Virus record (IMG/VR): IMGVR_UViG_3300036770_003657
Span: 310,001-374,000 of that record
Reading direction: 5' to 3' (one strand)
DNA: 64,000 bases
A program made the position numbers and the translations under genes. The notes below the pieces were generated by a model, which was given only the letters and a program-made list of their open reading frames with translations, ran no database searches and was not told the origin of the DNA. Shown here piece by piece: positions 7,676-56,870 of this stretch. Within the stretch, counting starts at the first letter, position 1, and every line of letters begins with the position of its first letter.

Positions 7676-7751
7676 TGGTGCCGCCTCGTGGGATCGAACC
7701 ACGTTCCTCGGTTCTTCAGACCGGTGCTATGACCACATCAGCTAAAGCGGC
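7676..7751 (-). tRNA. trnF: tRNA-Phe(GAA)
   Basis: Cloverleaf, loop CTGAAGA, CCA; C:A mismatch at top of anticodon stem. Confidence 0.9.
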
Positions 7752-7756
7752 ATATT

Positions 7757-7832
7757 TGGGGTAACCTATGAGGATCGAACTCATACTGTCTCGGTCACGA
7801 CGAGAGGTGCAGGCCACTACACTAAGGTCACC
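7757..7832 (-). tRNA. trnH: tRNA-His(GTG)
   Basis: G-1:C73 identity pair, loop TCGTGAC, CCA. Confidence 0.9.
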
Positions 7833-7838
7833 ATTAAC

Positions 7839-7913
7839 TGGTGCTGATAATAGGATTTGAACCTATGACTTCCATCTTACCAAGATGGCGATCTACCCCT
7901 GATCTATATCAGC
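7839..7913 (-). tRNA. trnT: tRNA-Thr(GGT)
   Basis: CCATC-TTGGTAA-GATGG, CCA. Confidence 0.92.
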
Positions 7914-7984
7914 AAGAAAGTTAGTTGTACAAAAGTATAGGTTTTGATCGAAACTTATCTAGTAAGTATACAAAAGGACTTACT

Positions 7985-8254
7985 ATGAGAGCACAAGACC
8001 TACTAAGAGATTATATAAACATTGTTGAAAAATGGGGCACGCCTACTACAGTCGCACCCAGCGAACGTGGCAAATATAAGGGCAAGAGTAAACAGGAACT
8101 ACAAAAAAGTTACAATTCTCTAAAAGCCAGTGGCCCACATAAAAAAGGATCAACAGAATATGGTCGTATGCGTGAACTAGCATTTGCCATACGTGCTAAA
8201 AGTGGATGGGGCAGTGTAAAGGGTGAAGGTAGTTATGAACAAGAGGAAGAATAA
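7985..8254 (+). CDS. Small basic phage protein (possible virion internal protein)
   Basis: SD AAAGGA before ATG 7985; MRAQDLLRDYINIVEKW... Confidence 0.6.
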   Translation: MRAQDLLRDYINIVEKWGTPTTVAPSERGKYKGKSKQELQKSYNSLKASGPHKKGSTEYGRMRELAFAIRAKSGWGSVKGEGSYEQEEE

Positions 8255-8257
8255 TTC

Positions 8258-8503
8258 TTGGATATAGAATTTATCTGCCTCTCAAAACTTGGTGTAGGAT
8301 CTGTTCTAGTAAGACATACGGATATTATTACTATGGAGCTTACTCCTATGGGATTCACTCGTATTGAATTTGGTTACGGTGAACATCTCATAGTGGAGGA
8401 AACACCTATTCAAATACTAAACAAGATTAGAGCAGCACAAGAACTCAGTGAGCAGTCTGTTGAATCAACAATTAAAGAACCTATTAATAAGGAGTCTAAA
8501 TAA
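8258..8503 (+). CDS. Small protein, FlbD-like fold possible
   Basis: DIITME.....TRIEF..GEHLIVEETPIQIL resembles the FlbD family pattern. Confidence 0.35.
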   Translation: MDIEFICLSKLGVGSVLVRHTDIITMELTPMGFTRIEFGYGEHLIVEETPIQILNKIRAAQELSEQSVESTIKEPINKESK

Positions 8504-9107
8504 TCTCTACACTAATTTTTTCTTTAGTTTTAGTAGGAAACAGTTGATTAGTTACATGATGCAGTCTTCTGCTTCTATCAGGATCACCAAATCCAATTCC
8601 CATTAATAAACTAGGACCGTTTGTCATTCCTAAAATTTGTTGTATCTGTGTTCCATCAAAACAGGCACAACAACCAGTTTTATAACCTAAAATATTACTG
8701 ATTAAATTAGCATAACCTGCCGCTATACCTATGGCCATGTCGCTATCTCTAGTTGAAGTAGCTTTGGAACCATTTTCATAAATATGGTTTTTTATTTTAT
8801 GTCTATCACTGGTTTCTATAGCCTCAAACACAAGTAAAAGATTAGCTAAAGTTTGACTGTTAGTTGTCCACTCTCCATTAGGTAACAAAAATCCTTCAGT
8901 AGTTGCATGTATAGATTCAATAATATTTCTATTTACTACAGCATAAACCTTATAAAAAGCATGATTTTGTTTACTGGGGCAATTAGATACAGCATGTATT
9001 ATAAGTTCTAAATCCTCTTGCGGAATATTTTTAGAAATGTCCCAATTACGCTGACAATGTTGACTTCTTATTATAGCTTTTTCAAGTTCTTGATGAGTAA
9101 TTTGCAT
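8496..9107 (-). CDS. Nitroreductase-family flavoprotein
   Basis: RSQHCQRNWD, CPSKQN, LLMGIGF. Confidence 0.8.
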   Translation of the reverse strand: MQITHQELEKAIIRSQHCQRNWDISKNIPQEDLELIIHAVSNCPSKQNHAFYKVYAVVNRNIIESIHATTEGFLLPNGEWTTNSQTLANLLLVFEAIETSDRHKIKNHIYENGSKATSTRDSDMAIGIAAGYANLISNILGYKTGCCACFDGTQIQQILGMTNGPSLLMGIGFGDPDRSRRLHHVTNQLFPTKTKEKISVEII

Positions 9108-9143
9108 AATATTGCTCCTAGTACATTATTTATACTAGAAATT

Positions 9144-9218
9144 TGGTGCCTCTTCTTGGGAACGATCCAAGGACCCCCACCTTATCAAGATGGTGCTCTA
9201 CCACTGAGCTAAAGAGGC
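9144..9218 (-). tRNA. trnI: tRNA-Ile(GAT)
   Basis: CCATC-TTGATAA-GGTGG, CCA; T-loop ATCGTTC. Confidence 0.88.
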
Positions 9219-9222
9219 ATAT

Positions 9223-9297
9223 TGGATGCGGAGGACGGATTCGAACCGCCGATCTCTAGGTTATGAGCCTAGTGAGTTTCCTCTTCTCTACCCCGCG
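9223..9297 (-). tRNA. trnM: tRNA-Met(CAT), initiator-like
   Basis: C1:A72 mismatch, loop CTCATAA, CCA. Confidence 0.85.
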
Positions 9298-9303
9298 ATT
9301 GTA

Positions 9304-9378
9304 TGGTGGACCGGCGGAGGATCGAACTCCGACTAAAGGCTTGCAAAGCCCCTGTGCTACCATTATCACTACCAGCCC
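9304..9378 (-). tRNA. trnA: tRNA-Ala(TGC)
   Basis: G3:U70, loop TTTGCAA, CCA. Confidence 0.92.
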
Positions 9379-9384
9379 ATTGTT

Positions 9385-9460
9385 TGGCTCCGGTCCAGGG
9401 ATTCGAACCCCGCTTCATGGATTAACAGTCCACCGCCTACACCTAGCTTGCTCGACCGGA
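9385..9460 (-). tRNA. trnN: tRNA-Asn(GTT)
   Basis: GTGGA-CTGTTAA-TCCAT, CCA. Confidence 0.92.
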
Positions 9461-9467
9461 ATATACT

Positions 9468-9559
9468 TGGTGGAAGGAGAGGGATTCGAACCCTCGGAGC
9501 AGGTTACCCCACTCGACAGATTAGCAATCTGCTGCCTTAAGCCTCTCAGCCATCCTTCC
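9468..9559 (-). tRNA. trnS: tRNA-Ser(GCT)
   Basis: Long variable arm, loop TTGCTAA, CCA. Confidence 0.93.
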
Positions 9560-9568
9560 TAATACTAC

Positions 9569-9652
9569 TGGTGCCCTGAGAGGGACTCGAACCCCCACAC
9601 CTTACGGCACTTGCTCCTAAGGCAAGCGTGTCTACCATTTCACCACCAGGGC
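9569..9652 (-). tRNA. trnL: tRNA-Leu(TAG)
   Basis: CTTGC-CTTAGGA-GCAAG, variable arm, CCA. Confidence 0.93.
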
Positions 9653-9659
9653 TACAACT

Positions 9660-9734
9660 TGGAGCAGGATATCGGATTCGAACCGATGACATTCTCGTTG
9701 GCAACGAGACATTCTACCCCTGAATTAATCCTGC
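9660..9734 (-). tRNA. trnG: tRNA-Gly(GCC)
   Basis: TCTCG-TTGCCAA-CGAGA, CCA. Confidence 0.93.
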
Positions 9735-9758
9735 ACTACACTACTTATATCTTGTCTA

Positions 9759-9848
9759 TGGTGGAAGCGGTGAGATTCGAACTCACGGACCGTTACCAGT
9801 CGTCTGTTTTCAAGACAGGTGCATTAAACCAGGCTCTGCCACACTTCC
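9759..9848 (-). tRNA. trnS: tRNA-Ser(TGA)
   Basis: Loop CTTGAAA, long variable arm, CCA. Confidence 0.93.
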
Positions 9849-9853
9849 TTATT

Positions 9854-9929
9854 TGGTAGCAATGGTCAGACTCGAACTGACGATAGGCACCGTATGAAGG
9901 TGCTGCATTAGCCACTATGCTACATTGCT
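9854..9929 (-). tRNA. trnM: tRNA with CAT anticodon (elongator Met or Ile2)
   Basis: GCACC-TTCATAC-GGTGC, paired 1:72, CCA. Confidence 0.85.
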
Positions 9930-9930
9930 G

Positions 9931-11226
9931 TTAATTATGTGATATAAACTTAAGACCTGCTTGAGCGGCTATTGCAGCCCAAGCATCATTATGATCTTCA
10001 TCTACTGAAAAAACTGCCGCCTTAGCATTAGTTTTTTGTAACTGGCTGTTGGCAAACCTAGCCCATTCTCTAGCAATTAATTTCCATACACCTTTATATT
10101 GGCCGCTTGATGCATTGTCCACCATAAGTTCAAGATATGGAGTCTGATCCTCCATATGGAATAGTGGAGTAACTACAAAACTACATTCCCAATTTGGATT
10201 GTCACGCATATTAAAAACATCAGGATCAAGTTCACTAAAACGAGTTTTAGGATCAGTTGTGGCCATTATCATTATATCCTCTCGCCTTATACGAATTGGC
10301 ACATTGGGATATAAACTGTTAAAGGAATTCTTAACAACCTTGGCCATATAGGCTGCGGCTTTTGGAGCCCAAGATCTCATCAATTCTTGTTCCCACTTTA
10401 ACCCTTGTTTTTGATCCATACCAGTTTGTTGAACATCTTCATCTAATTTATTATCAGAATCACTTGGAACTGTTACACCCATTGTGTTAACACGAATCTT
10501 TCCTTGTTCTACCTGATCAATTTGTGCTTGATTACCAAATGATAACGGATCCGTTATTACAAGTTGTGGTCCATATTTTGTTCTACGAAACATAAAATTA
10601 CCACCATTTAGATCTCTTTTATAACCACTTTTATAAAGATATCGTATGATATTGATTGCTTCTATCAATTGCGGATCTTTTATACTATTGCCTTTCTTAT
10701 CTTTATATTTAGGATCAAGTAAAGTTTGAGTTATAAGATAAACTAATTCTGACATTATAATAATACCTGGTCTCCCTACTGTATAGGGATATTGATCTTG
10801 GAGACTATTAAAATCAACATTCAATATTTTACTAAAAACCATAATCAATTCATCTGAGTCGAGGTCTCGCCAGTTACTTAACTTTTCTATGTCTAATTCA
10901 AAATATGGAGCACCTCTTTTAGGCTTTACTATATTGGCATTGTAGACCTGAGGTAGATAAGGATTATCGGTTTGATCCTTTAATGACATCAACTTATTAA
11001 TGTATGCGTAATAACCGTCTAATTTAGGCTTATTTTGATCAAATCTAGATACTTTCTTTGCTGTGCCAATACCCAATTCGCCTTCTGGTTGATCATAAAC
11101 TTTACCAAAATGTCCACTACCTAATTCAGGTTGTGTCTTGGATATTGCTGCCATTCGTTGCTTTTGAGTTGGGCCTTGTGTAACTGGAAGATCCTCACTG
11201 ATAATGTCTGTAATTTTCATAATCAT
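9931..11226 (-). CDS. Protein-kinase-like (Ser/Thr/Tyr or small-molecule) protein with extra C-terminal module
   Basis: Gly-rich loop LGSGHFGKVY, AKK, catalytic-loop-like RDLNGGN, ITDP at the DFG position. Confidence 0.7.
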   Translation of the reverse strand: MIMKITDIISEDLPVTQGPTQKQRMAAISKTQPELGSGHFGKVYDQPEGELGIGTAKKVSRFDQNKPKLDGYYAYINKLMSLKDQTDNPYLPQVYNANIVKPKRGAPYFELDIEKLSNWRDLDSDELIMVFSKILNVDFNSLQDQYPYTVGRPGIIIMSELVYLITQTLLDPKYKDKKGNSIKDPQLIEAINIIRYLYKSGYKRDLNGGNFMFRRTKYGPQLVITDPLSFGNQAQIDQVEQGKIRVNTMGVTVPSDSDNKLDEDVQQTGMDQKQGLKWEQELMRSWAPKAAAYMAKVVKNSFNSLYPNVPIRIRREDIMIMATTDPKTRFSELDPDVFNMRDNPNWECSFVVTPLFHMEDQTPYLELMVDNASSGQYKGVWKLIAREWARFANSQLQKTNAKAAVFSVDEDHNDAWAAIAAQAGLKFISHN

Positions 11227-11240
11227 ATTTAGTTAGGTTT

Positions 11241-11326
11241 ACCATATTGAAACACACTGATTGAACCTTTACCTCTTCCGAGTCCGTTCTTACCGTCAGG
11301 CGTTACACAATGTGCTTCAATATGGT
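11241..11326 (-). ncRNA. Long-stem hairpin RNA (family member 2)
   Basis: 16-bp stem ACCATATTGAAGCACA/TGTGTTTCAATATGGT (G:U on minus strand). Confidence 0.65.
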
Positions 11327-11449
11327 TGCCGGTTACAAAATCCGGCGTTACACTTTCGGAGTAACTGTTCTACCTATCCCGTCACCGACTTCGTTTAAGA
11401 CTCGCCGCCTTTATACACGCTGATGGCCACGTGTTCTGGTATTGCTACC
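11323..11449 (-). ncRNA. CCA-ending structured RNA with anticodon-stem-loop mimic
   Basis: Ends GCCGG-ATTTTGTAA-CCGGC-AACCA; internal GTTAC/GTAAC hairpin; not a cloverleaf. Confidence 0.5.
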
Positions 11450-11514
11450 ATATTTGAGCATACTACTCATCGGCTAGCCGCCATTTGTCTGTTCGGCAAT
11501 ATGCTCAAATATGG
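11448..11514 (-). ncRNA. Long-stem hairpin RNA (family member 3)
   Basis: Perfect 15-bp stem enclosing a core that is repeated at 12851-12889. Confidence 0.75.
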
Positions 11515-11586
11515 CAGGGGTACTCCGACTCGAACGGAGAAATGCGGGATCAAAACCCGGTGTTTTACCAATTAGACTATACCCCA
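11512..11586 (-). tRNA. trnQ: tRNA-Gln(TTG)
   Basis: Loop TTTTGAT, CCA. Confidence 0.92.
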
Positions 11587-11592
11587 ACTGAT

Positions 11593-11667
11593 TGGCGGTC
11601 CCAACGGGAATCGAACCCGTCCCTGCGGCGTGACAAGCCGCTATACTCACCGATATACTATGGAACC
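11593..11667 (-). tRNA. trnD: tRNA-Asp(GTC)
   Basis: GCGGC-TTGTCAC-GCCGC, CCA. Confidence 0.93.
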
Positions 11668-11672
11668 ATATT

Positions 11673-11746
11673 TGGCGTCCCTGCACGGATTCGAACCGCG
11701 ACTAAGAATTTTGGAGATTCACGTGCTACCGTTACACTACAGAGAC
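11673..11746 (-). tRNA. trnW: tRNA-Trp(CCA)
   Basis: Loop CTCCAAA, G73, CCA. Confidence 0.9.
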
Positions 11747-11753
11747 ATTGTTT

Positions 11754-11828
11754 TGGTGCTCTGTGAAGGACTTGAACCCTCATCGCCGGATTACAAAACC
11801 GGAATTCTAGCCTTTGAAATAACAGAGC
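11754..11828 (-). tRNA. trnT: tRNA-Thr(TGT)
   Basis: CCGGT-TTTGTAA-TCCGG (U:U at 31:39), CCA. Confidence 0.88.
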
Positions 11829-11833
11829 GTTGG

Positions 11834-11911
11834 TGGAGTTAGGAGTCGGATTCGAACCGACGGGTTGACAGTTTTGCAGACTGTTGCGTTGGGCCTCTCC
11901 GCCATCCTAAC
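11834..11911 (-). tRNA. trnC: tRNA-Cys(GCA)
   Basis: ACAGT-CTGCAAA-ACTGT, U73, CCA followed by a second CCA. Confidence 0.92.
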
Positions 11912-11914
11912 ATT

Positions 11915-11989
11915 TGGTACGGGCACTCGGGCTCGAACCGAGAACTTACTGGTTAAAAGCCAGTTACTCTACCTTTGAGTTATACCCGC
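11915..11989 (-). tRNA. trnK: tRNA-Lys(TTT)
   Basis: ACTGG-CTTTTAA-CCAGT, CCA. Confidence 0.93.
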
Positions 11990-12041
11990 AAAATAAAAAA
12001 CCCTTGGCAAAATCTATGACTTACCCAAAGGCCATAATTCT

Positions 12042-12116
12042 TGGTACACCCAACGGGAGTCGAACCCGTCTTTCCAGCTTGAAAGGCTAGCGTCCTAACC
12101 GATAGACGATGGGTGC
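12042..12116 (-). tRNA. trnE: tRNA-Glu(TTC)
   Basis: CTAGC-CTTTCAA-GCTGG, CCA. Confidence 0.93.
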
Positions 12117-12122
12117 TTTGTT

Positions 12123-12207
12123 TGGTGGAGAGCCAGGGACTCGAACCCCGTATGCCTGAGGCGTCGGATTTACAGTCCGATGCAGTAACCTGTTCTGCTC
12201 GCTCTCC
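12123..12207 (-). tRNA. trnY: tRNA-Tyr(GTA)
   Basis: TCGGA-CTGTAAA-TCCGA, variable arm, CCA. Confidence 0.93.
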
Positions 12208-12243
12208 GTATGTGTTTATAAATACTCCGAAGAGAACATCCCA

Positions 12244-12732
12244 CTAAATGTTCACATTTATGAATGGGTCTTCGTCCATTAATCCAATTGTTATTGCCTT
12301 TCTAACAGATGTTACATTTGCTACACTATGCAAAACATGCGTATTTAATATATGCCATCTGAAAGGTTCTATTTCTAATTTCATTATCGTTTCTAAATCA
12401 TCTATTGTCGGATGGCTGTATCTAGGACCAATATAAATATCTCTATTCTTGATACGATGCAGCCGTGTTACGACGTTTCCTCCTCTAGAAATAATATAGT
12501 TTAATCCCCAACGTCTGAAATCGCAGTGAGGAGCAACATTAGCTTCCATAACTTGACAGCCCATTCTGTCTTTTATAGGGCTAACATGTTTTACTAGCCA
12601 ATCTATAAGTTGTTCTGAAATGTTATATCTTGAGTAAACTCCATCTTTAAATCCTACTTTATCTGTGTAATAACAATCTACAAGAAGATTGGAGGGTATA
12701 TTAGGTAATTGATCCAAATAAGTAAAAAGCAT
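12244..12732 (-). CDS. Putative Fe(II)/2OG-oxygenase-like protein
   Basis: APHCD...WGLNYI...WHILNTHVLHSV...RKAIT; paralog of 1177-1761. Confidence 0.55.
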   Translation of the reverse strand: MLFTYLDQLPNIPSNLLVDCYYTDKVGFKDGVYSRYNISEQLIDWLVKHVSPIKDRMGCQVMEANVAPHCDFRRWGLNYIISRGGNVVTRLHRIKNRDIYIGPRYSHPTIDDLETIMKLEIEPFRWHILNTHVLHSVANVTSVRKAITIGLMDEDPFINVNI

Positions 12733-12776
12733 AATCTATTTATTTTAATAACAGATAATTTATCTTAAAAAAATTT

Positions 12777-12840
12777 TAACACACTCTAGCAGTTTATCTT
12801 TCTGCCCCATCTTACTAGGTAAGTGTGGACGAGTGTGTGT
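12777..12840 (-). ncRNA. Long-stem hairpin RNA (family member 4)
   Basis: ACACACTC/GAGTGTGT stem; inner GCAG-AAAGATAAA-CTGC and CTTAC-CTAG-TAAG. Confidence 0.5.
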
Positions 12841-12899
12841 AATAAAGCAGACTACTCATCGGCTCGCCGCCATTTGTCTGTTCGGCAATCTGCTTTATT
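12841..12899 (-). ncRNA. Long-stem hairpin RNA (family member 5)
   Basis: 11-bp stem AATAAAGCAGA/TCTGCTTTATT around the 39-nt repeated core. Confidence 0.75.
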
Positions 12900-12900
12900 A

Positions 12901-13018
12901 CTACTACCTTTTTACACATCCTAGTTACCGCCTAGGACTTATCATCCGGTAGTACGCCCTCGTTTGCCACATGTTTTAAGTGCATGGCAGGACCGCGTTC
13001 CCTATACACACTTTGCTA
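12901..13018 (-). ncRNA. Unassigned structured RNA directly after promoter P3
   Basis: Hairpins TGCCA..TGGCA (loop CACTTAAAA) and TCCTAG-GCGGTAA-CTAGGA. Confidence 0.45.
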
Positions 13019-13029
13019 TCTTAAACTGT

Positions 13030-13058
13030 ATTATATACAGTCTCCAGCATATTGTCAA
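13030..13058 (-). promoter_or_regulatory. Consensus sigma70 promoter P3
   Basis: TTGACA-17 nt-TATAAT; palindrome CTGTA-N5-TACAG spans the -10 box. Confidence 0.85.
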
Positions 13059-13088
13059 CTATTGCTTTGTTACTCTTTTACAACATCT

Positions 13089-13122
13089 AAAAAAAACCCC
13101 AAGGTGTTTAGTCCTGGGGTCC
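13089..13122 (-). terminator. Intrinsic terminator of attenuator
   Basis: CCCCAGG-ACTAAACA-CCTTGGGG followed by T8. Confidence 0.85.
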
Positions 13123-13157
13123 TTAAGTTGGATATACTACTATCCTACCGGGACCCC
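13116..13157 (-). promoter_or_regulatory. Antiterminator hairpin of attenuator
   Basis: GGGGTCC (inside leader ORF 3' end) pairs with GGACCCC (5' arm of terminator); inner GGATA/TATCC. Confidence 0.75.
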
Positions 13158-13255
13158 CGACAATCTGTATCATTAGCCTTAATCATTGACCAATAGGCTG
13201 GCATTGAGCCTGACTCATGGCGTTGACTAAAACTAAAATAATACTGGGATTTCAT
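13145..13255 (-). CDS. Attenuator leader peptide, 36 aa
   Basis: MKSQYYFSFSQRHESGSMPAYWSMIKANDTDCRGSR*; AAGGA SD-like upstream; below ORF-track cutoff. Confidence 0.75.
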   Translation of the reverse strand: MKSQYYFSFSQRHESGSMPAYWSMIKANDTDCRGSR

Positions 13256-13292
13256 TTAAACTTTATTTCCTTTGTTACTTACTATGCTTCAC

Positions 13293-13321
13293 ATTATACA
13301 CTTGCTAGTACAAGTTGTCAA
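13293..13321 (-). promoter_or_regulatory. Consensus sigma70 promoter P2
   Basis: TTGACA-17 nt-TATAAT; spacer contains inverted repeat ACTTG-N6-CAAGT. Confidence 0.88.
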
Positions 13322-13354
13322 CAACTTTTGGTGTTGTTTTTCTACTACATCTTG

Positions 13355-13362
13355 TATTTATA
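13355..13362 (-). promoter_or_regulatory. T4-like late promoter
   Basis: TATAAATA. Confidence 0.55.
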
Positions 13363-13383
13363 CAATTGCTTAATTCATATGCT

Positions 13384-13412
13384 ATTATATGGTGATTTCA
13401 TTGACCTGTCAA
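13384..13412 (-). promoter_or_regulatory. Consensus sigma70 promoter P1
   Basis: TTGACA-17 nt-TATAAT. Confidence 0.85.
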
Positions 13413-13708
13413 CTATGTTTGAGCATCCAGAACAGAGCCTCACCTTTTTTCCAAAAACCAAAATACCATTCTTGCCTTGTGTCTCGTTGTAGGAAGAATG
13501 CTTCCACCTTACCGTTGGCTCTATGTACTTTGTTATTCATTTCTTCCCACCAATCTGTTTTGTGTAGGAAGTCTGCGTTGAAATATTCGTGTGTCTTAAT
13601 TACTAGAATATCGGCTGGAGGATTGTTAGCATAAAGATTCTTAAACCTTTCTGCTTCGTAGTAAGGTATATGACCTTCTAACCAATCCTGCCAAGCCAAT
13701 ATTTGCAT
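13409..13708 (-). CDS. Hypothetical protein
   Basis: 99-aa ORF in operon with rbr/DUF3501. Confidence 0.6.
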   Translation of the reverse strand: MQILAWQDWLEGHIPYYEAERFKNLYANNPPADILVIKTHEYFNADFLHKTDWWEEMNNKVHRANGKVEAFFLQRDTRQEWYFGFWKKGEALFWMLKHS

Positions 13709-13715
13709 TCATTAT

Positions 13716-14294
13716 TTAAGCAAAGTCTTTAACTAATTCGTTTCTAACTTCATCTTTAAGTTGAATTTCATAAGGATAAAGATCATGCCCAATCCCTAGG
13801 TATACTTTATTGGCGGAATCCTTAAAATCTATGATTTCACCAGGTTTAAGTTCAAACCTAAGAAAATGAACCGCACTCGTTTTGGAATCTGTGCTACGTT
13901 CGAGATCTTCATCTGCAATTGCATATATACGCTGATGTCCTTGGATTCTTAAAAATACTGTATCTTCAATATTTTTAAGTTGTTCCAATTTCACTTTACG
14001 TAGATCAGGATCCCCGTATTCCAAAGTCATAGTGGCAATAAGATTCATACCGTTTGGTATTAAAGGATTATAAGCATCTAGTTCATCCTTGATACCATTA
14101 GTTGTAAATGTACGCTCAATGAACAACATTTCCTGAACTTGGTACTTTACAGTATCTCTATCTTCAAAAGCCAAAGTACAATTTGGTCCAATTGATACTT
14201 GACGTAGGCGACGATGATCTATAGCACTGCGTCTAAAGTCATCACGAACCTTACTATAATCTTCCAATGTCATTAAATCGTCTTGAGTTAACAT
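13716..14294 (-). CDS. DUF3501-family protein (rubrerythrin-associated)
   Basis: FEDRDTVKYQVQEMLFIER, ELDAYNPLIP, KTSAVHFLRFEL; follows rubrerythrin as in proteobacterial loci. Confidence 0.85.
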   Translation of the reverse strand: MLTQDDLMTLEDYSKVRDDFRRSAIDHRRLRQVSIGPNCTLAFEDRDTVKYQVQEMLFIERTFTTNGIKDELDAYNPLIPNGMNLIATMTLEYGDPDLRKVKLEQLKNIEDTVFLRIQGHQRIYAIADEDLERSTDSKTSAVHFLRFELKPGEIIDFKDSANKVYLGIGHDLYPYEIQLKDEVRNELVKDFA

Positions 14295-14305
14295 ATCTAA
14301 TCCTA

Positions 14306-14740
14306 TTATTGCTCTGCTTTAAATGCGTCAAGAGTTTTCTTGAACTTACCAGCGTGGCTACGTTCTGCCTTGGCCAATGTTTCAAACCAATCAGCAATCT
14401 CGTCAAAACCTTCATCACGAGCATCACGTGCCATACCTGGGTACATATCTGTGTACTCATGTGTTTCACCAGCAATGGCTGATTCAAGTGCTTCAACAAC
14501 TGTTTTAGCGCTCATACCAGTTTCTGGATCACCGCTTCCACCATTGATCAAATATTCCATATGACCGTGTGCATGACCAGTTTCACCTTCTGCTGTATGA
14601 CGGAAGATTGATGCTACATCTGGTGCACCTGCAATGTCTGCCATGTTTGCGAAATACAAGTATCTACGATTTGCTTTACTTTCACCTGTAAACGCATCCT
14701 TAAGATGCTGTTCTGTTTTACTACCTACTAGTTTAGTCAT
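14306..14740 (-). CDS. rbr: Rubrerythrin
   Basis: [41 protein letters not shown] diiron motifs. Confidence 0.92.
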
Positions 14741-14785
14741 TGTTTTCTCCTTGTGTGTATGACGTGTTTTATTGTACATTTATTT

Positions 14786-14815
14786 AATCTATTAATCAAG
14801 CGATTTTAATAGATT
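14786..14815. promoter_or_regulatory. Inverted repeat upstream of rbr (LysR/OxyR-like operator candidate)
   Basis: AATCTATTAA-N10-TTAATAGATT with CTAT/ATAG cores. Confidence 0.45.
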
Positions 14816-14842
14816 TTTTATGGTATTTTTTAATAAGGCTTA

Positions 14843-15655
14843 TTAAATTTTTTTATAAACAGCAATTACAGTATGCCCAATATCAAAGTTTATATTATGA
14901 TCTTTGATATCATATCTATTCTCATCAAGTAAACTACGATGAAAATCTGCTAGGGGTTCTTCGTATATTTCCACTTGTCTTAGGTCAAACAAGTTGGCAA
15001 TATTAGTCAAACATTGTTTGGTAAATCGTGTAACATGATGTGGAGGATAGTTTAGTGCCCAACCTTCTATATTGCCTAAAAAACCGTCTTCGTTTGGCAC
15101 ACTGAGTATGAGTATACCATTAACTTTTAAACAGCGTAGAGCATTGGATATAAAAGATCGTGTGTCATCTACATGTTCTAATACTTGGAATCCACATATT
15201 ACGTCATATAGGCCTTGATGTTCTTGTATGCTTTGTTTTATTACTTTCGGGTTTTGGCTGTAAGGATCTAGCCCAGTATAATCGGCTTCAACCATTTTAC
15301 CAAAGTAACCCTCTCCGCAGCCAATCTCCAGTATATTGTCATCTGATATGATGTATCTTTTGGCAAAGTCAAATTCTGGTTTGACCAATTGATAGTACCA
15401 AGGAAATGCCTGTAGTTGACTATAGAAGTTTGAACCACCCATAACAGGTGGTTTATAAAACCTAAGATCACAATCCATACATCTGTATAATTCTATATCA
15501 GAGGTAATATCTTCTGTGACATCAACTGGTGTATTATCAAACAAGGGATCTGTTTTATAAGCATTATGTATAAAATCACGGCTATACGTTTTATGTATAG
15601 CTGTGTTACTACTATGACATAAAGGACATTTTTTCATCTTTTTCCATATATTCAA
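14843..15655 (-). CDS. Class I SAM methyltransferase with N-terminal Zn-ribbon
   Basis: CPLC...CMDC, ILEIGCGEG, FQVLEHV, HHVTRF. Confidence 0.85.
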   Translation of the reverse strand: MNIWKKMKKCPLCHSSNTAIHKTYSRDFIHNAYKTDPLFDNTPVDVTEDITSDIELYRCMDCDLRFYKPPVMGGSNFYSQLQAFPWYYQLVKPEFDFAKRYIISDDNILEIGCGEGYFGKMVEADYTGLDPYSQNPKVIKQSIQEHQGLYDVICGFQVLEHVDDTRSFISNALRCLKVNGILILSVPNEDGFLGNIEGWALNYPPHHVTRFTKQCLTNIANLFDLRQVEIYEEPLADFHRSLLDENRYDIKDHNINFDIGHTVIAVYKKI

Positions 15656-16121
15656 AAAGGTTATTCCAGACTTCTTGTTTTTTCATTTCTTTAATTTCAT
15701 CGTCATATGGATGACTACCATCGAACCTATAGTGATAACGTAGAGCATCAGCACATACTATGTTCTTCTCTACAATATGTCTAAGATCTTCCCTACCACA
15801 GAGTAATCTTTCTCTACATAAGTCTACATTGTCCTGCATGAGATCAACTCCGTAAACTGTAGATAACGCCTGTTCAAAGGTTGAACCATTCTCCATCTTG
15901 CGGATTAAGACTTCGCCAAGGAACTGTCCATCACCGCAAGTAGGGTCCAGGAAAGTTTTGGTAGTATCAGTAAACACTTCTTCGGGTAATTGTGTTAGTA
16001 TTTCTTGAACAAGAGGAGTCGGGGTAAAGACTTCTCCCGTTGCCTTTACCCTTGCCTGTTCTCGCTCTACACCACTCATGTAATCACGGTCGCGGATGTG
16101 ATTGATTATGTCATTTAACAT
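15612..16121 (-). CDS. N6-adenine DNA methyltransferase-like small subunit
   Basis: RVKATGEVFTP (motif X), FLDPTCGDGQF (motif I), YGVDL; no NPPY. Start overlaps the upstream stop. Confidence 0.75.
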   Translation of the reverse strand: MLNDIINHIRDRDYMSGVEREQARVKATGEVFTPTPLVQEILTQLPEEVFTDTTKTFLDPTCGDGQFLGEVLIRKMENGSTFEQALSTVYGVDLMQDNVDLCRERLLCGREDLRHIVEKNIVCADALRYHYRFDGSHPYDDEIKEMKKQEVWNNLFEYMEKDEKMSFMS

Positions 16122-19100
16122 TGGCTTCAACATAATCGATTTCATCTTGAGTAAGGCCGAAGTGAGCATATAGTTCTGCGTCAGTCCAAACCTTACTAGC
16201 GAGTTTAGGCAATGATGACAACACTTTTCCATTAAGGAAACCGCTCCATTTACCTGTGTTTACGACAAATTTGTAAAGTTTGCTATTAAGATAACTTAGG
16301 ATATGTTGTGATTCTGCTGAGTTTGTTAAAATATATTGGCATACTTCTGAGGTTCCCAGATTGCCTTCACTATAGAAAGGTTTAAAATAACCACTTGTAG
16401 TCCAAATAATCTTAGACTTTAAAAAGTCTTTTGATTGTTTTTTACAAAATTTTGTTTGAGCATTGGTATGGAATGTTTCATACTTGTAAGTCGTGTCTTT
16501 AGTGTCAGAAAAATTCTTATGCTTATGGTCGCTATGGCACGATGTATCGCAAAGAATATCTAACTTGGGGTGAGTCGAGTTAATTACTTTATCATGTATA
16601 GGAAATGTTTTAGAAAAATTTCTCGGAAGATATTGAAGTCTAGCAAGGTCAACTTCTAGTCCGTCAATCAATGCCGTTGAGGTATTCTTATTTTTTTGCA
16701 TGATCCATGCTGTAAAACTACTACCAACCGTAAAATATTTTCCAACTTCAGTATCAACCCAAATCAGAGAGTTATCTTTAAACATTTTGAGGACTTGACT
16801 GTTTGGGCTCATCCAACTGTCAGGGGTAACAAATGCAATATACCCATCTGTGTTGAGTAGTTCAGATCCTTTGTCAACAAACTTACTCCACAAATTATGA
16901 CTCTTGGGTTGTTTTGTTCCCTTATCATTGTTACCTTGATAAGGAGGATTACCTACAATAACATCAAATTTCATATCAAACTCCAATTCTGTAAAGTCGC
17001 CTTGCATTACTGTGATGCCAGGATACTTGCGTTTAATCTGGTTGCAGAGAAAACTGTATTTGTCATTATACACAATCTTGTCTACAATAGCAACGCCAAA
17101 CATGTCCACAAGCACATCAATCTCCGATCCGTGACCACCTGCTACTACAAGGATCTGACGGCAATGCTTACTTTTGATAAAACGCTTTAGTTCTCTGTTA
17201 CCAAAAATATCAAACCAAAGTTTAAGATCATCTTTGAGAATGGCCAGGGCATTATTCTCAATGTGCTTTTGTTTATTATTATATTTACTCATCCGCACAA
17301 TCATGTCTAGCGTGGAAATCTCTAGACGACTAGCAAGACGCTTGATGGTGCCGGGATACACTCCGTAAAGTTCTGCAAACTCTCGGCTCATTTCTGCATT
17401 GACATCGATGATATCTACACACTCAAGGAAACTTTCACCTTGATAATTGCTCAGGGCCAACACAGTTGTGGCACTTCCGTTGATCATACGGATGGCTTTT
17501 TCTACGATCACCTTAAGAGGATTTTTTTTTGGTCGGCCCGATGCTGTATGACCTGAATCAAAAGTCTTGCCAGTGGCAACGACTTTGTCAATTTTAGATT
17601 TCTCTGCCTTACTTCCAGATGATCGTTTGGCCAATTCGCCAAAGGCTTCGATCTCTTCAGAAGTCAAATCCTCTAGAGTAATGCGAGTATGAGCATTGGC
17701 AATCTCCAACAGTTTATTGTTGTCTTCGAACTGCTTAATAACTTCGTCAGCATCAATCCATTGACCAGAAACCATGTCCTTGATGTTGACACTATTCAAC
17801 ACTTCTCGAACAGCGTCAGGATAGGTTTTTCCTTTTTGTCGAATCAACAGAGCCGCTTCTACTGCTACGCTCATCACAGTATTGCGAGTCTTACTTTGGT
17901 CAAAGGCAAAGTCAAAGATGTGACCAAACTTTTTGCCATAGCCGGGTGTAAGGCAACGACTGTATTTTTGCATGTAAGGATAGACATCGCCACCTTCTTG
18001 CATAAACAAGCAGGCCTGGATCTCAGGAATACTGTAACTGCGAGTGCCCATCATGTTGGTGATCACCAACAGTTTGTTGCGGCCTTCATAGTATCCGTTT
18101 TGCAAGCGGACCAGTTCTTCTTTGGTATCGCCTTCAGAATCTTTGTTGTTGGTGTGATCGCCGTGTAATACTTTTACCTTATGCTCGGGGCAGGCCTTTT
18201 CAATGACTTCGGCAAGTTGGTCCATTGCCAGTTTGGGAATATTAACAAACAGCATAGAATTTTGAATCTCTTCGCCGGCACAGTCACTTATGTTAAATCC
18301 ATAAATTGGCTGGTATCCAAAGATGTCCTGGAATAGTGCAGATATAAATTTCTGCTGGCTCAATGGCTTTGCTAGAATCTTTGTGATGTTAGGCAACAGA
18401 TCCTTATCAAAATCTTCCAGCAGTTTGTTGATGCGGCCGCTGAACAACATATTGTAGAATCTACGCACTACTACATTAGGAATACTTTTATCCTGTTCTA
18501 CCATGCAGTAAGGAACACTAATAATTTCATCGATGGCATTCTTGCCAAACGCCTTGGCTAGTCGACCGATGTTAGTTCCGCTGGCGTTGATTCGCGTTAC
18601 AGTCTTGTTTGCTAGAATGTATTCAACCTTTTCGACTTGACTGTCAGTGTGAGTGCCAAAGTCTGTTTCTTCTAGCAAGGCAATATGTGTGCCAGTAAGT
18701 TTGTTGATCCATTCGTATTTTTCTTCTGCTTCCGGATTCAGACTAACAAACACAACGGGCATCTTACCATCTGCGATAGCCTGTTGATATTGTTGTTCTG
18801 CGTCCGAATCGGCGGCATCAATAAACGTCATGCAAGCAAAATCAATATACTTGCCGATTTCATCTTTGTAAGAAGTCTTAACACTGAGCCCAACGCCGTA
18901 GGCCATAATAAACATCGACTCGTGCCCAAACTCTTCTCGCATGGTTTTTGCAAGGGACAGGAACAAGATAGTTTTACCAATTCGTGCCGCAAGTTCGCAT
19001 ACAAAATTAGTTACGATACCATTTTGGCGAAGAGCAGACAAAACTTTTTTAATAACTAGAATCTGAACTTCTCGCAAATTTGCAGCCTGCTTTACATGAT

Positions 19101-56786: not shown

Positions 56787-56870
56787 TATTGTCTCCAACT
56801 GTAGTTTGGAGATAGCCTCCAAACCGCCCATAATAGTATTTATTAGGAACGATTTGGATAGTAAACTAGT

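What the first reader, a model, noticed from the sequence alone, without database searches (positions are those of the whole stretch)
13030..13412. Three perfect sigma70 promoters plus a T4-type late promoter stacked ahead of the tRNA/ncRNA array
Seen: exact TTGACA-17-TATAAT at 13412-13384, 13321-13293 and 13058-13030, plus TATAAATA at 13362-13355, all on the minus strand. Each overlaps or abuts a palindrome (TTGAC-CT-GTCAA at 13401-13412, ACTTG-N6-CAAGT, CTGTA-N5-TACAG, TTGTA-TTTA-TACAA). Inference: rrn-like tandem promoters giving early and late drive. Three of the four pass through the attenuator and P3 bypasses it, possibly under operator control.
Basis: partly seen in the sequence, partly recalled or inferred. 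Interest (0 to 1): 0.6.

Follow-up and report, generated by a model that had tools for sequence, protein, structure and literature searches.

The report
Conserved promoter stack before phage tRNAs
A 400-kb freshwater jumbo phage keeps three textbook-perfect host-type promoters and one T4-style late promoter in front of its tRNA gene array, arranged around a conserved on/off terminator and an unknown structured RNA; the promoters are real and conserved, but the proposed operator palindromes are not.

Summary
TTGACA-17-TATAAT lies at 13412-13384, 13321-13293 and 13058-13030, and TATAAATA at 13362-13355, all on the minus strand. The window belongs to a 399,796-bp uncultured T4-related jumbo myovirus. 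It has 29 perfect N17 promoters (about 0.3 expected), a gp55-type late sigma gene, and ATAAATA as its most intergenic-enriched 7-mer.

Eleven metagenomic relatives keep all four elements. Only 1 of 32 motif columns varies, against 30 of 88 neighbouring columns (p=2e-4). The four palindromes are not conserved and are no commoner than background, so operator control is not supported.

P1, the late box and P2 lead into a 36-codon ORF. Its stop codon follows the 5' arm of a hairpin that competes with an intrinsic terminator. This bistable design recurs, with compensatory changes, in two distant relatives. P3 lies beyond the terminator and starts a ~250-nt structured RNA that matches no Rfam family. 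In relatives this RNA abuts tRNA-Tyr, the first gene of the array; here a 2OG-oxygenase-like gene has been inserted between them.

Verdict: real, conserved early-plus-late promoters. The promoter types are known; the attenuator-ncRNA-tRNA module may be new. No transcript ends were mapped.

The parts
13384..13412 (-). P1, sigma70-type promoter (TTGACA-17-TATAAT). Its -35 hexamer overlaps the TGA stop codon (13411-13409) of the upstream 99-aa ORF.
   Evidence: The -35 is invariant in 12 of 12 sequences. The -10 is TATAAT in 10, TAAAAT in L086 and TACAAT in L094. The 5' half of the spacer varies.
13355..13362 (-). T4-type late promoter box TATAAATA (core ATAAATA).
   Evidence: Invariant in 12 of 12 sequences while the flanking positions 13363, 13352 and 13351 vary. 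ATAAATA is the top intergenic-enriched 7-mer (60 of 90 copies intergenic), and 54 of 90 copies lie 0-60 nt upstream of a same-strand start codon, against 19 for the antisense control. A gp55-family sigma gene lies at G000 76904-77695.
13322..13346 (-). A-rich tract upstream of P2. It could act as an UP-like element; this is inferred only.
   Evidence: Nearly invariant in all relatives that keep P2. No functional test was made.
13293..13321 (-). P2, sigma70-type promoter (TTGACA-17-TATAAT).
   Evidence: Both hexamers are perfect in 11 of 11 sequences that keep the segment, while 9 of the 17 spacer positions vary.
13145..13255 (-). 36-codon leader ORF with a conserved AAGGA upstream. The region is also strongly structured as RNA.
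   Evidence: The ORF is open in all 11 sequences that keep the segment (36-39 codons, one in-frame 3-nt indel), but the changes are mostly non-synonymous. Fold z-score is -6.6. Equivalent ORFs sharing an A/G-Y/L-W-S motif occur in G001 and G004.
13116..13158 (-). Competing (anti-terminator) hairpin: 5' arm GGGGGUCC at 13158-13151, 3' arm GGACCCC at 13122-13116. The leader stop codon UAG lies at 13147-13145.
   Evidence: Folded as part of a 50-nt segment it gives -23.2 kcal/mol, and it shares CCCC with the terminator's 5' arm. It forms in the nascent RNA of every lineage tested. G001 has GGGUUCC/GGAACCC and G004 has CCGGGG/CCCUGG instead.
13089..13122 (-). Intrinsic terminator: stem around CCCCAGG (13119-13113) and CCUUGGGG (13104-13097), followed by U8 at 13096-13089.
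   Evidence: -14 to -15 kcal/mol here and -18 kcal/mol in close relatives (-15 to -19 across all lineages). Ten pairs are 100% paired in 7 sequences, and 3 pairs show changes on both sides. The G.U pair at 13102 is G-C in all relatives and in 4 sequencing runs. The scan missed it because the loop is 9 nt.
13059..13088 (-). Remnant left by deletion of a 52-aa ORF. That ORF lies between the terminator and P3/ncRNA in other relatives.
   Evidence: Type-B loci (L089, L091, L093, L094), G001 and G004 carry the ORF. A variant in run X2 has 117 nt in place of 13059-13078.
13030..13058 (-). P3, sigma70-type promoter (TTGACA-17-TATAAT), downstream of the terminator.
   Evidence: TTGACA is kept in 11 of 11 sequences that keep the segment. 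The -10 is TATAAT at N17 in 7 of them, and TAAAAT or TACAAT at N18 in the 4 where it sits inside the 3' end of the 52-aa ORF.
12773..13029 (-). Structured ncRNA of about 250 nt, started by P3. It matches no Rfam family.
   Evidence: Fold z-score is -4.5. The consensus structure has 71 pairs, 16 of them with compensatory changes, in 6 sequences. Rfam gives nothing near any gathering score. Covariance model R1 finds it in G001 (E=7e-11) and G004 (E=2.5e-7), beside tRNAs.
12208..12772 (-). Strain-specific inserted cassette: a T-run, AATAAATA (12744-12737) and ORF162 (12732-12244), which has a 2OG-Fe(II)-oxygenase-like fold.
   Evidence: The cassette is skipped in contigs of 4 runs (joint from 12207 to 12774-12778). 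It is also absent from the metagenome loci that extend this far. The protein atlas places ORF162 in a viral family with an Asp_Arg_Hydrox/2OG-oxygenase-like structure. Pfam and PHROGs gave no hit.
7676..12207 (-). tRNA array of 20 genes in three blocks, beginning with tRNA-Tyr at 12207-12123; protein-coding ORFs separate the blocks.
   Evidence: No other sigma70-like site of 11/12 or better lies on this strand between 19.7 kb and the array's last tRNA. In the relatives that reach this far, a tRNA array follows about 580-750 nt after the 99-aa ORF; it begins with tRNA-Tyr in all but L085, where tRNA-Glu is the first gene found.

Best explanation
The 383-bp segment is the conserved transcription-control region for the stable-RNA locus of an uncultured freshwater T4-related jumbo myovirus that relies on host RNA polymerase.

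P1, P2 and P3 are strong early promoters read by host sigma70 holoenzyme. The TATAAATA box between P1 and P2 is a late promoter read through the phage's gp55-type sigma. Together they would keep the locus transcribed both early and late.

Transcripts from P1, the late box and P2 enter a 36-codon leader ORF. Its last codons and stop codon cover the 5' arm of a hairpin (GGGGGUCC/GGACCCC). That hairpin competes with the downstream intrinsic terminator (CCCCAGG/CCUUGGGG followed by U8).
- If the leader is not translated, or the ribosome lags, the upstream hairpin forms first and transcription reads through.
- If a ribosome reaches the stop codon, it frees GGACCCC and the terminator can form.

P3 lies 31 nt beyond the terminator and is not subject to it. 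It starts a ~250-nt structured ncRNA that in relatives runs straight into tRNA-Tyr and the rest of the array. In this genome a gene cassette with its own late-type box has been inserted between the ncRNA and tRNA-Tyr.

Shown here: the motifs, their genome-wide excess, their conservation, the gp55 homologue, the mutually exclusive hairpins and their covariation, the ncRNA covariation, and the synteny with tRNAs.

Inferred: that any of these sites fires, its timing, that the leader is translated, and the direction of the switch.
For: Motifs and their excess:
- Exact motifs.
- 29 perfect N17 sites against 0.27 expected, co-oriented with the genes around them.
- A gp55-family sigma gene (250 bits) and a T4-type major capsid protein.
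- ATAAATA is the most intergenic-enriched 7-mer and is gene-proximal in the sense orientation.

Conservation:
- In 11 metagenome loci retrieved through the neighbouring protein rather than through the promoters, 1 of 32 motif columns varies against 30 of 88 others (p=2e-4). For the most distant locus, L094, the figures are 1 of 32 against 28 of 88.

Switch and terminator:
- The two hairpins are mutually exclusive. In isolation the upstream hairpin folds at -23.2 and the terminator at -14.0 kcal/mol. The relatives' full-length folds are nearly bistable, and the upstream hairpin forms in the nascent RNA of every lineage.
- The terminator helix is 100% paired with 3 double changes.
- The leader ORF is open in the window's clade, G001 and G004, and its stop lies 6-20 nt past the 5' arm in each.

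Link to the tRNAs:
- These are the only sigma70-like sites of 11/12 or better upstream of the 20 tRNAs.
- In the relatives that reach this far, a tRNA array follows the module, starting with tRNA-Tyr in all but L085.
- Another perfect promoter abuts tRNA-Thr elsewhere in the genome.
- The ncRNA shows covariation.

Related phage: PA5oct uses host RNA polymerase and TTGAC/TATAATA promoters (PMC7318152).
Against: - No transcript 5' or 3' ends are available. The one metatranscriptome run is held as short contigs, which show neither starts nor strand and may include DNA.
- The host is unknown.
- The leader peptide has no run of regulatory codons. Its substitutions are mostly non-synonymous, the conserved GCCTATTGGTC block keeps its third codon positions, and the spacing from AAGGA to ATG is long (11-12 nt). 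The element may therefore act as RNA without being translated.
- In G004 the competing hairpin is weak (-14.4 kcal/mol, and not the minimum-energy fold).
- A T4 gp45 clamp profile found nothing in this genome (inconclusive).
- In this genome the inserted cassette may partly uncouple P3 from the tRNAs.
Confidence: 0.7

Rival explanations
1. The promoters belong to independent cassettes rather than a coordinated stack. P1 and P2, the 36-codon ORF (or the ~200-nt RNA) and the terminator form a self-contained early gene that ends at the terminator. Only P3 serves the ncRNA and tRNAs, and the competing hairpin is incidental.
For: The genome is full of small units, each with a perfect promoter and a small ORF, especially at 10-19 kb. 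The P2-to-terminator RNA is very stable (z=-6.6). In most close relatives the full-length fold favours the terminator state. P3 or an equivalent promoter follows the terminator in three of four lineages.
Against: The competing hairpin and its overlap with the end of the ORF are kept, with compensatory changes, in G001, which has no detectable DNA similarity to this locus. G001 has no site of 10/12 or better between the terminator and the ncRNA. Its ncRNA and downstream tRNA would therefore depend on read-through.
Confidence: 0.2
2. One reading: the palindromes that overlap each promoter are operators for a phage or host repressor, which gates the stack and in particular P3.
For: All four palindromes exist. 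Inverted repeats with 6-bp arms are slightly commoner at perfect promoters (9 of 36) than at random windows (14%). The early-cluster promoters have their -35 hexamer bracketed by AAGACC/GGTCTT.
Against: The arms are lost in relatives without compensation. ACTTG/CAAGT at P2 is kept only in the window, L085, L086 and L089. The TACAG arm at P3 is lost in L088, L090, L095 and L092. GTCAA at P1 is lost in L085, L086 and L094. TTGTA/TACAA at the late box is lost in L094. The hexamers stay invariant in the same sequences. The background frequency of 5+5 palindromes is 38-45%.
Confidence: 0.05
3. The sites are mainly PeSL-like terminator-promoter modules, kept because they travel with gene cassettes and mediate modular shuffling. 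The local pile-up is then a by-product of repeated insertion and deletion, not a design for tRNA expression.
For: A terminator followed 31 nt later by a perfect sigma70 promoter matches the composite terminator/promoter layout of PeSLs (PMC4122927). Indels lie at the module's edges: the 52-aa ORF is present or absent, homology in run X2 resumes exactly at the -35 of P3, and ORF162 is inserted.
Against: The positions and order of P1, the late box and P2 are fixed in the ten relatives that keep the whole segment (L087 diverges before P2), with 91-92 nt between P1 and P2. P3 drives an RNA gene, not the Shine-Dalgarno sequence and ORF that follow a PeSL. This view can also hold alongside the main explanation rather than exclude it.
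Confidence: 0.05

Closest known systems
Early promoters of T4-type phages and PeSL (promoter-early stem-loop) modules (Hinton 2010, PMC2988021; Comeau et al. 2014, PMC4122927)
   Same: Near-perfect or perfect TTGACA-N17-TATAAT sites are read by host sigma70 polymerase. They are numerous, often tandem, and often sit just after a stem-loop or terminator. Indels between close relatives lie at their edges.
   Different: Here two of the promoters feed a leader ORF with a bistable terminator, and the third starts a structured RNA and a tRNA array, not a Shine-Dalgarno sequence and ORF. No TGn extended -10 element is present.
T4 late promoters (TATAAATA, gp55/gp33/gp45-dependent)
   Same: The box is identical. 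The genome encodes a gp55-family sigma, and the motif is depleted in coding sequence and enriched just upstream of genes.
   Different: The functional core in this phage appears to be NATAAATA, with A, G or T as the first base. This copy lies about 100 nt upstream of the next ORF and inside a stack of sigma70 promoters. A gp45 homologue was not detected with the T4 profile, and gp33 was not tested.
T4 tRNA region: 8 tRNAs, stable RNAs rnaC and rnaD, and the segB homing endonuclease (record NC_000866). From my own knowledge and PMC2988021, T4 tRNAs count among the middle genes, which are reached partly by extension of early transcripts.
   Same: A phage tRNA cluster is co-located with small stable RNAs of unknown function and interrupted by an inserted gene.
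   Different: The ncRNA here lies at the 5' end of the array. It is unrelated to rnaC and rnaD (best score 5 bits with model R1). The inserted gene looks like an oxygenase, not a GIY-YIG endonuclease.
Ribosome-mediated (leader-peptide) transcription attenuators of the trp, his and pheA operons
   Same: A short ORF precedes an intrinsic terminator. An alternative hairpin shares a strand with that terminator. A ribosome at the stop codon would cover the 5' arm of the alternative hairpin.
   Different: There is no run of codons for one amino acid. The downstream genes are an ncRNA and tRNAs, not a biosynthetic operon. It occurs in a phage. Translation of the leader has not been shown.
Transcription of Pseudomonas phage PA5oct (Lood et al. 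2020, PMC7318152)
   Same: It belongs to a related jumbo lineage (68% major capsid protein identity). It depends on host RNA polymerase, has 32 TTGAC/TATAATA promoters, and carries tRNAs and highly transcribed ncRNAs of unknown function.
   Different: The ncRNA family found here is absent from the PA5oct record, and the locus shares no DNA similarity with any record in the phage collection.

Membership tests
sigma70-dependent -35/-10 promoter | TTGACA and TATAAT hexamers separated by 17 +/- 1 bp | tested here: met
   12/12 matches with a 17-nt spacer at all three sites.
sigma70-dependent -35/-10 promoter | Non-random occurrence, co-oriented with genes | tested here: met
   29 sites against 0.27 expected, and 1 hit for the reversed-pattern control. 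Strand follows the local gene orientation.
sigma70-dependent -35/-10 promoter | Purifying selection on the hexamers relative to spacer and flanks | tested here: met
   1 of 32 motif columns varies against 30 of 88 others (p=2e-4). P2 and P3 spacers vary while their hexamers do not.
sigma70-dependent -35/-10 promoter | A mapped transcription start 6-8 nt downstream of the -10 hexamer | not testable with these tools
   Only contigs of a metatranscriptome run were available.
T4-type late promoter (gp55-dependent) | A TATAAATA box | tested here: met
   Present at 13362-13355 and invariant in 12 of 12 sequences.
T4-type late promoter (gp55-dependent) | The phage encodes a gp55-family sigma factor | tested here: met
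   phrog_12791 scores 250 bits and phrog_234 scores 86 bits at G000 76904-77695.
T4-type late promoter (gp55-dependent) | The motif is used genome-wide in front of genes | tested here: met
   60 of 90 ATAAATA copies are intergenic. 54 of 90 lie within 60 nt upstream of a same-strand start codon, against 19 for the antisense control.
T4-type late promoter (gp55-dependent) | gp33 co-activator and gp45 sliding-clamp activator | tested here: inconclusive
   The T4 gp45 profile phrog_223 found nothing, and it also found nothing in the control genomes. gp33 was not searched.
PeSL (promoter-early stem-loop) module | A stem-loop or terminator immediately upstream of a sigma70-like early promoter | tested here: met
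   The terminator U-run ends at 13089 and the -35 of P3 starts at 13058.
PeSL (promoter-early stem-loop) module | A Shine-Dalgarno sequence and the start codon of an ORF at the 3' end of the module | tested here: not met
   P3 is followed by a structured ncRNA. The 25-aa frame there is not kept as a gene.
PeSL (promoter-early stem-loop) module | Indels between close relatives at the module's boundaries | tested here: met
   The 52-aa ORF is present or absent, and a 117-nt replacement ends at the -35 of P3.
Leader-peptide transcription attenuator | An intrinsic terminator and a mutually exclusive alternative hairpin | tested here: met
   The two share the CCCC segment at 13119-13116. Energies and nascent-RNA folds are; terminator covariation is.
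Leader-peptide transcription attenuator | A short ORF whose terminating ribosome would cover the 5' arm of the alternative hairpin | tested here: met
   The stop codon lies 6 nt past the arm in the window's clade, 20 nt in G001 and 10 nt in G004.
Leader-peptide transcription attenuator | A run of regulatory codons for the sensed amino acid | tested here: not met
   No tandem codon run. Only an A/G-Y/L-W-S motif is shared between lineages.
Leader-peptide transcription attenuator | Translation-dependent termination shown by experiment | not testable with these tools
   This needs in vitro coupled assays or reporter fusions.
rrn-type tandem P1-P2 promoters | Tandem promoters ahead of stable-RNA genes | tested here: met
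   P1 and P2 are 91 nt apart, with ncRNA and tRNA genes downstream.
rrn-type tandem P1-P2 promoters | A GC-rich discriminator, the hallmark of stringent control | tested here: not met
   The discriminators are AGCATAT, GTGAAGC and ACAGTTT.
Any Rfam family (for the RNAs downstream of P2 and P3) | A score at or above the family's gathering threshold | tested here: not met
   The best hits are sok at 22 bits (threshold 59) and NsiR1 at 18 bits (threshold 39).

The most novel reading that the evidence does not exclude
The leader ORF and its bistable terminator may be a ribosome-sensing attenuator conserved across a clade of uncultured freshwater jumbo phages. It would couple transcription of the phage's ncRNA and tRNA array to the infected cell's translation capacity: slow or absent leader translation gives read-through and more tRNA. 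The constitutive promoter P3 and a late promoter would provide a floor of expression. This would be a leader-peptide attenuator governing tRNA genes rather than an amino-acid biosynthesis operon, and it would sit in a virus.
Probability: 0.3. Interest if true: 0.7.

Novelty: new variant of a known kind. Interest (0 to 1): 0.42.

Why it matters
Large phages carry big tRNA arrays, but how those arrays are transcribed and regulated is largely unknown outside T4. This locus gives a compact, conserved and fully specified control region of about 650 bp: three consensus early promoters, one late promoter, a switchable terminator with a leader ORF, and an unknown structured RNA. The region can be synthesised and tested in E. 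coli or in vitro without a cultured host.

If the switch senses translation, it would be a feedback loop by which a phage tunes its own tRNA supply. The promoters themselves are ordinary for T4-related phages. The comparative data also show that short palindromes at promoters should not be read as operators without checking their conservation.

Tried and rejected
Searches that found nothing:
- Megablast and blastn of the locus against 50,697 phage records.
- Related loci in IMG/VR through ORF162 and through the 99-aa ORF.
- DNA search of the locus in five large related IMG/VR contigs. The covariance model later found the ncRNA in two of them.
- Rfam at permissive thresholds, once on 8 kb and once on 561 nt; nothing came near a gathering score.
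- ncRNA model R1 in the T4 tRNA region (best 5 bits) and in PA5oct, Vibrio phage 2.275.O, Sinorhizobium phage Phosso and Yersinia phage fHe-Yen9-04.
- Pfam and PHROGs for ORF162, the 99-aa ORF and the 36-aa ORF.
- A literature search for a leader-peptide attenuator at jumbo-phage tRNA genes; none of the listed papers mentions jumbo phages. That library is incomplete.

Inconclusive:
- The T4 gp45 clamp profile found nothing in this genome, and nothing in the control genomes either.
- The terminator scan did not list the terminator because its loop is 9 nt; folding and covariation recover it.
- Metatranscriptome run X20 has short contigs over 12865-13058 and 13205-13354. Contigs show neither starts nor strand, and DNA carry-over is possible, so this is not evidence of transcription.

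Rejected:
- Operator palindromes.
- The long-range pairing of the leader's first codons with the terminator's 3' arm that RNAalifold proposed: 5 of its 10 pairs break in L094.
- L087 was left out of the conservation counts because it diverges into unrelated GC-rich sequence after 13343; it may be a chimeric contig.

Constraints: read laying was given 3,001 letters. No alternative genetic code was used. The large HMMER protein search was not run.
Full report
OBSERVATION. Read on the minus strand, the window has TTGACA-17-TATAAT at 13412-13384 (P1), 13321-13293 (P2) and 13058-13030 (P3), and TATAAATA at 13362-13355. The consensus scan scores all three sites 12/12. No other site between 10 and 16 kb scores above 10/12. 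The four palindromes are present as described.

WHAT GENOME THIS IS. The window is positions 310001-374000 of a 399,796-bp IMG/VR virus record with 36.6% G+C.
- It encodes a T4-type Gp23 major capsid protein (328 bits).
- The nearest cultured capsid proteins are Sinorhizobium phage Phosso (75%), Vibrio phage 2.275.O (71%), and PA5oct and the 121Q-like phages (68%).
- It encodes a gp55-family late sigma factor (phrog_12791, 250 bits).
- Near-identical DNA occurs in freshwater, lake and subsurface metagenomes.
- PA5oct, a member of this broad lineage, depends on host RNA polymerase and has 32 TTGAC/TATAATA promoters (PMC7318152).

GENOME-WIDE PROMOTER CLASSES. The genome has 29 perfect N17 promoters, plus 5 at N16 and 2 at N18. 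Base composition predicts 0.27 for one spacer length, and the reversed-pattern control gave 1 hit.
- Their strand follows the local gene orientation.
- Thirteen lie at 10.3-19.4 kb in a repeated ~65-nt module.
- Another ends a few bases before tRNA-Thr at 276357.
- TATAAATA is the rarest of the 56 eight-mers of its composition (27 copies), yet 17 copies are intergenic.
- The core ATAAATA is the most intergenic-enriched 7-mer: 60 of 90 copies are intergenic, where 6.4% of the genome lies.
- 54 of the 90 copies lie 0-60 nt upstream of a same-strand start codon, against 19 for the antisense control.

Both promoter types are therefore real, selected classes in this phage. The three sigma70 sites here are the only ones of 11/12 or better on this strand between 19.7 kb and the end of the tRNA array.

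COMPARATIVE TEST. Relatives were retrieved through the 99-aa protein encoded just upstream, so the retrieval was blind to the promoters. This gave 11 metagenome loci with 74-98% protein identity.
- P1 keeps TTGACA in all of them; its -10 is TATAAT, TAAAAT or TACAAT.
- P2 keeps both hexamers perfectly in every locus that retains the segment, while 9 of its 17 spacer positions vary.
- TATAAATA is invariant while the bases on either side change.
- From 13412 to 13293, 1 of 32 motif columns varies against 30 of 88 others (Fisher p=2e-4). Against the most distant locus, L094, alone the counts are 1 of 32 and 28 of 88.
- P3 keeps TTGACA in all. Its -10 is TATAAT at N17 in seven sequences. In four it is TAAAAT or TACAAT at N18, and there it lies inside the 3' end of a 52-aa ORF.
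- Contigs from four sequencing runs agree with these variants.

PALINDROMES. None of the four is maintained.
- ACTTG/CAAGT at P2 becomes ACAAG...TAACT or AGAAG...TAGTC in most relatives.
- The TACAG arm at P3 becomes TAAGG or TACGG.
- GTCAA at P1 becomes GCCAA, GCCTG or ACCCC.
- The TTGTA/TACAA pair around the late box is lost in L094.
- A 5+5 inverted repeat overlaps 38% of random 29-nt windows and 45% of intergenic ones. It overlaps 18 of the 36 perfect promoters.

Operator control is therefore not supported. The TTGACAGG start of P1 matches the extended -35 of the early-cluster promoter family.

DOWNSTREAM OF P2: LEADER AND SWITCH. A 36-codon ORF (13255-13145) follows P2 and is preceded by an invariant AAGGA.
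- The ORF stays open in all 11 sequences that keep the segment, with one in-frame indel. Most changes are non-synonymous.
- The RNA is strongly structured (z=-6.6).
- The ORF ends in UGU CGG GGG UCC CGG UAG. GGGGGUCC (13158-13151) pairs with GGACCCC (13122-13116) in a hairpin of -23.2 kcal/mol.
- The same CCCC segment is the 5' arm of an intrinsic terminator: CCCCAGG/CCUUGGGG followed by U8 at 13096-13089, at -14 kcal/mol. The two structures cannot coexist.
- Before the terminator's 3' arm is transcribed, the upstream hairpin forms in every lineage. In the relatives' full-length RNAs the two states have nearly equal energy.
- The G.U pair at 13102 is G-C in all relatives and in all four runs.

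DOWNSTREAM OF P3: ncRNA AND tRNAs. P3 starts 31 nt after the U-run.
- From about 13023 to 12773 lies a conserved RNA (z=-4.5). Its consensus fold has 71 pairs, 16 with compensatory changes, in six sequences.
- It matches nothing in Rfam.
- In the relatives that extend this far it runs directly into tRNA-Tyr, except in L085, where no tRNA-Tyr was detected.
- In the window, 12208-12772 is an insertion absent from all of them and from four runs (joint from 12207 to 12774-12778).
- The insertion carries a T-run, an AATAAATA box and ORF162. ORF162 belongs to a viral protein family with a 2OG-Fe(II)-oxygenase-like predicted fold.
- Twenty tRNA genes follow, from 12207 to 7676.

DISTANT RELATIVES. 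A covariance model of the ncRNA finds it in two IMG/VR contigs that show no BLAST similarity to the locus. These are G001 (374 kb, E=7e-11) and G004 (E=2.5e-7), and in both the hit lies beside tRNAs.
- In G001 the order is: TTGACA-N17-TACAAT with GATAAATA inside the spacer (present twice, 313 nt apart, with tRNA-Leu and tRNA-Ile between the copies); then a 47-codon ORF containing MSAYWS; then GGGUUCC/GGAACCC competing with a CCCUAGG/CCCUAGGG-U6 terminator; then a homologue of the 52-aa ORF; then the ncRNA; then tRNA-Met.
- G004 has tandem 10/12 promoters, a leader ORF (GLWS), a weaker competing hairpin (CCGGGG/CCCUGG), the terminator, an 11/12 promoter directly after it, the 52-aa ORF homologue, the ncRNA and tRNA-Gln.
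- Across seven sequences the ten terminator pairs are 100% paired, and three pairs have changed on both sides.
- In every lineage the leader's stop codon lies 6-20 nt beyond the 5' arm of the competing hairpin.
- Because both outgroups carry the 52-aa ORF, its absence from the window is a deletion.

MECHANISM: SHOWN AND INFERRED.
- Shown: the motifs, their excess and conservation, the sigma factor gene, the competing structures and their covariation, and the synteny with the ncRNA and tRNAs.
- Inferred: host sigma70 polymerase fires P1-P3 early. gp55-polymerase fires the TATAAATA box late. Transcripts from the three upstream starts meet a terminator whose formation depends on whether a ribosome occupies the end of the leader ORF. 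P3 supplies attenuator-independent transcription of the ncRNA and tRNAs.
- The direction of the switch (translation favours termination) follows from the geometry and from analogy with the trp leader. The leader has no codon run and evolves more like an RNA than a protein, so an RNA-only switch remains possible.

COMPARISON WITH KNOWN SYSTEMS. The promoters themselves belong to known kinds: T4-type early promoters and PeSL terminator-promoter modules (PMC2988021, PMC4122927), and T4 late promoters.
- The layout resembles the T4 tRNA region in combining tRNAs, stable RNAs and an inserted gene. The ncRNA is unrelated to rnaC and rnaD, and it is absent from four cultured relatives.
- I did not find a described leader-ORF attenuator ahead of a phage tRNA array (that library is incomplete).

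LIMITS. There are no transcript ends and no known host. The comparative set contains one tight clade plus two distant genomes. The one RNA run is held only as contigs. E-values from model R1 are rough because calibration was shortened.

VERDICT. The promoter types are known. The conserved module of promoter stack, attenuator, ncRNA and tRNA array is a new variant worth a bench test.

Noticed in passing
window 12773-13029 (-): A structured RNA of about 250 nt with 16 of 71 pairs showing compensatory changes. It has no Rfam match. Homologues lie beside tRNAs in two distant jumbo-phage contigs. It is absent from the T4 tRNA region and from four cultured relatives.
   Followed up: partly
window 12208-12772 (-), ORF162 at 12244-12732: A strain-specific insertion between the ncRNA and tRNA-Tyr. 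It carries a T-run, an AATAAATA late-type box and a 162-aa protein from a viral family with a predicted 2OG-Fe(II)-oxygenase/Asp_Arg_Hydrox-like fold. It is absent from every relative and from four sequencing runs.
   Followed up: partly
window 11450-11512 (-) and 11226-11450 (-): Directly after tRNA-Gln lies a near-copy of the core of the ncRNA's long hairpin (model R1, E=6e-13). The next ~220 nt, up to the kinase-like ORF, contain no ORF and look richer in G+C than the genome; they may be another structured RNA.
   Followed up: no
G000 10312-19385 (+), outside the window: Thirteen perfect sigma70 promoters lie in a repeated ~65-nt module. In most copies the -35 hexamer is bracketed by an inverted repeat (AAGACC ... 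GGTCTT). Three tRNAs sit among them. Relative G002 has a similar terminal cluster of about 18.
   Followed up: partly
G000 276370-276398 (-), outside the window: A perfect TTGACA-17-TATAAT promoter ends 13 nt before tRNA-Thr (276357). It is followed by tRNA-Pro and tRNA-Val. This is a second case of a consensus promoter directly ahead of tRNAs.
   Followed up: no
window 19849-19821 and 19753-19725 (-): A second tandem pair of perfect sigma70 promoters, 96 nt apart. It lies ahead of a 1144-aa DNA-methyltransferase-domain ORF and an operon encoding methyltransferases, a rubrerythrin and a DUF3501 protein. That operon runs down to P1.
   Followed up: no
L089, L091, L093, L094; L096 (G001); L097 (G004): A conserved 51-54-aa ORF (motif L-T/S-x-E-Q-L/Y ... 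K ... R ... Y) lies between the terminator and the ncRNA in other lineages. It has been deleted in the window, leaving a ~30-nt remnant at 13059-13088.
   Followed up: partly
L096 (G001) 2397-2369 and 2084-2056 (-): Two paralogous TTGACA-N17-TACAAT promoters each carry GATAAATA inside the spacer. They may be composite early/late promoters.
   Followed up: no
L087 (OGVL01001061.1): This contig matches the window through the 99-aa ORF, P1 and the late box, then switches to unrelated GC-rich sequence after window position 13343. It may be a chimeric assembly or a recombinant.
   Followed up: no
window 31772-33649 (-), 14306-14779 (-), 13716-14294 (-), 44502-56831 (-): The phage encodes a DnaK/Hsp70 (65-70% identical to DnaK sequences found in records named for gammaproteobacterial hosts), a rubrerythrin, a DUF3501 protein and a 4109-aa giant ORF.
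   Followed up: no
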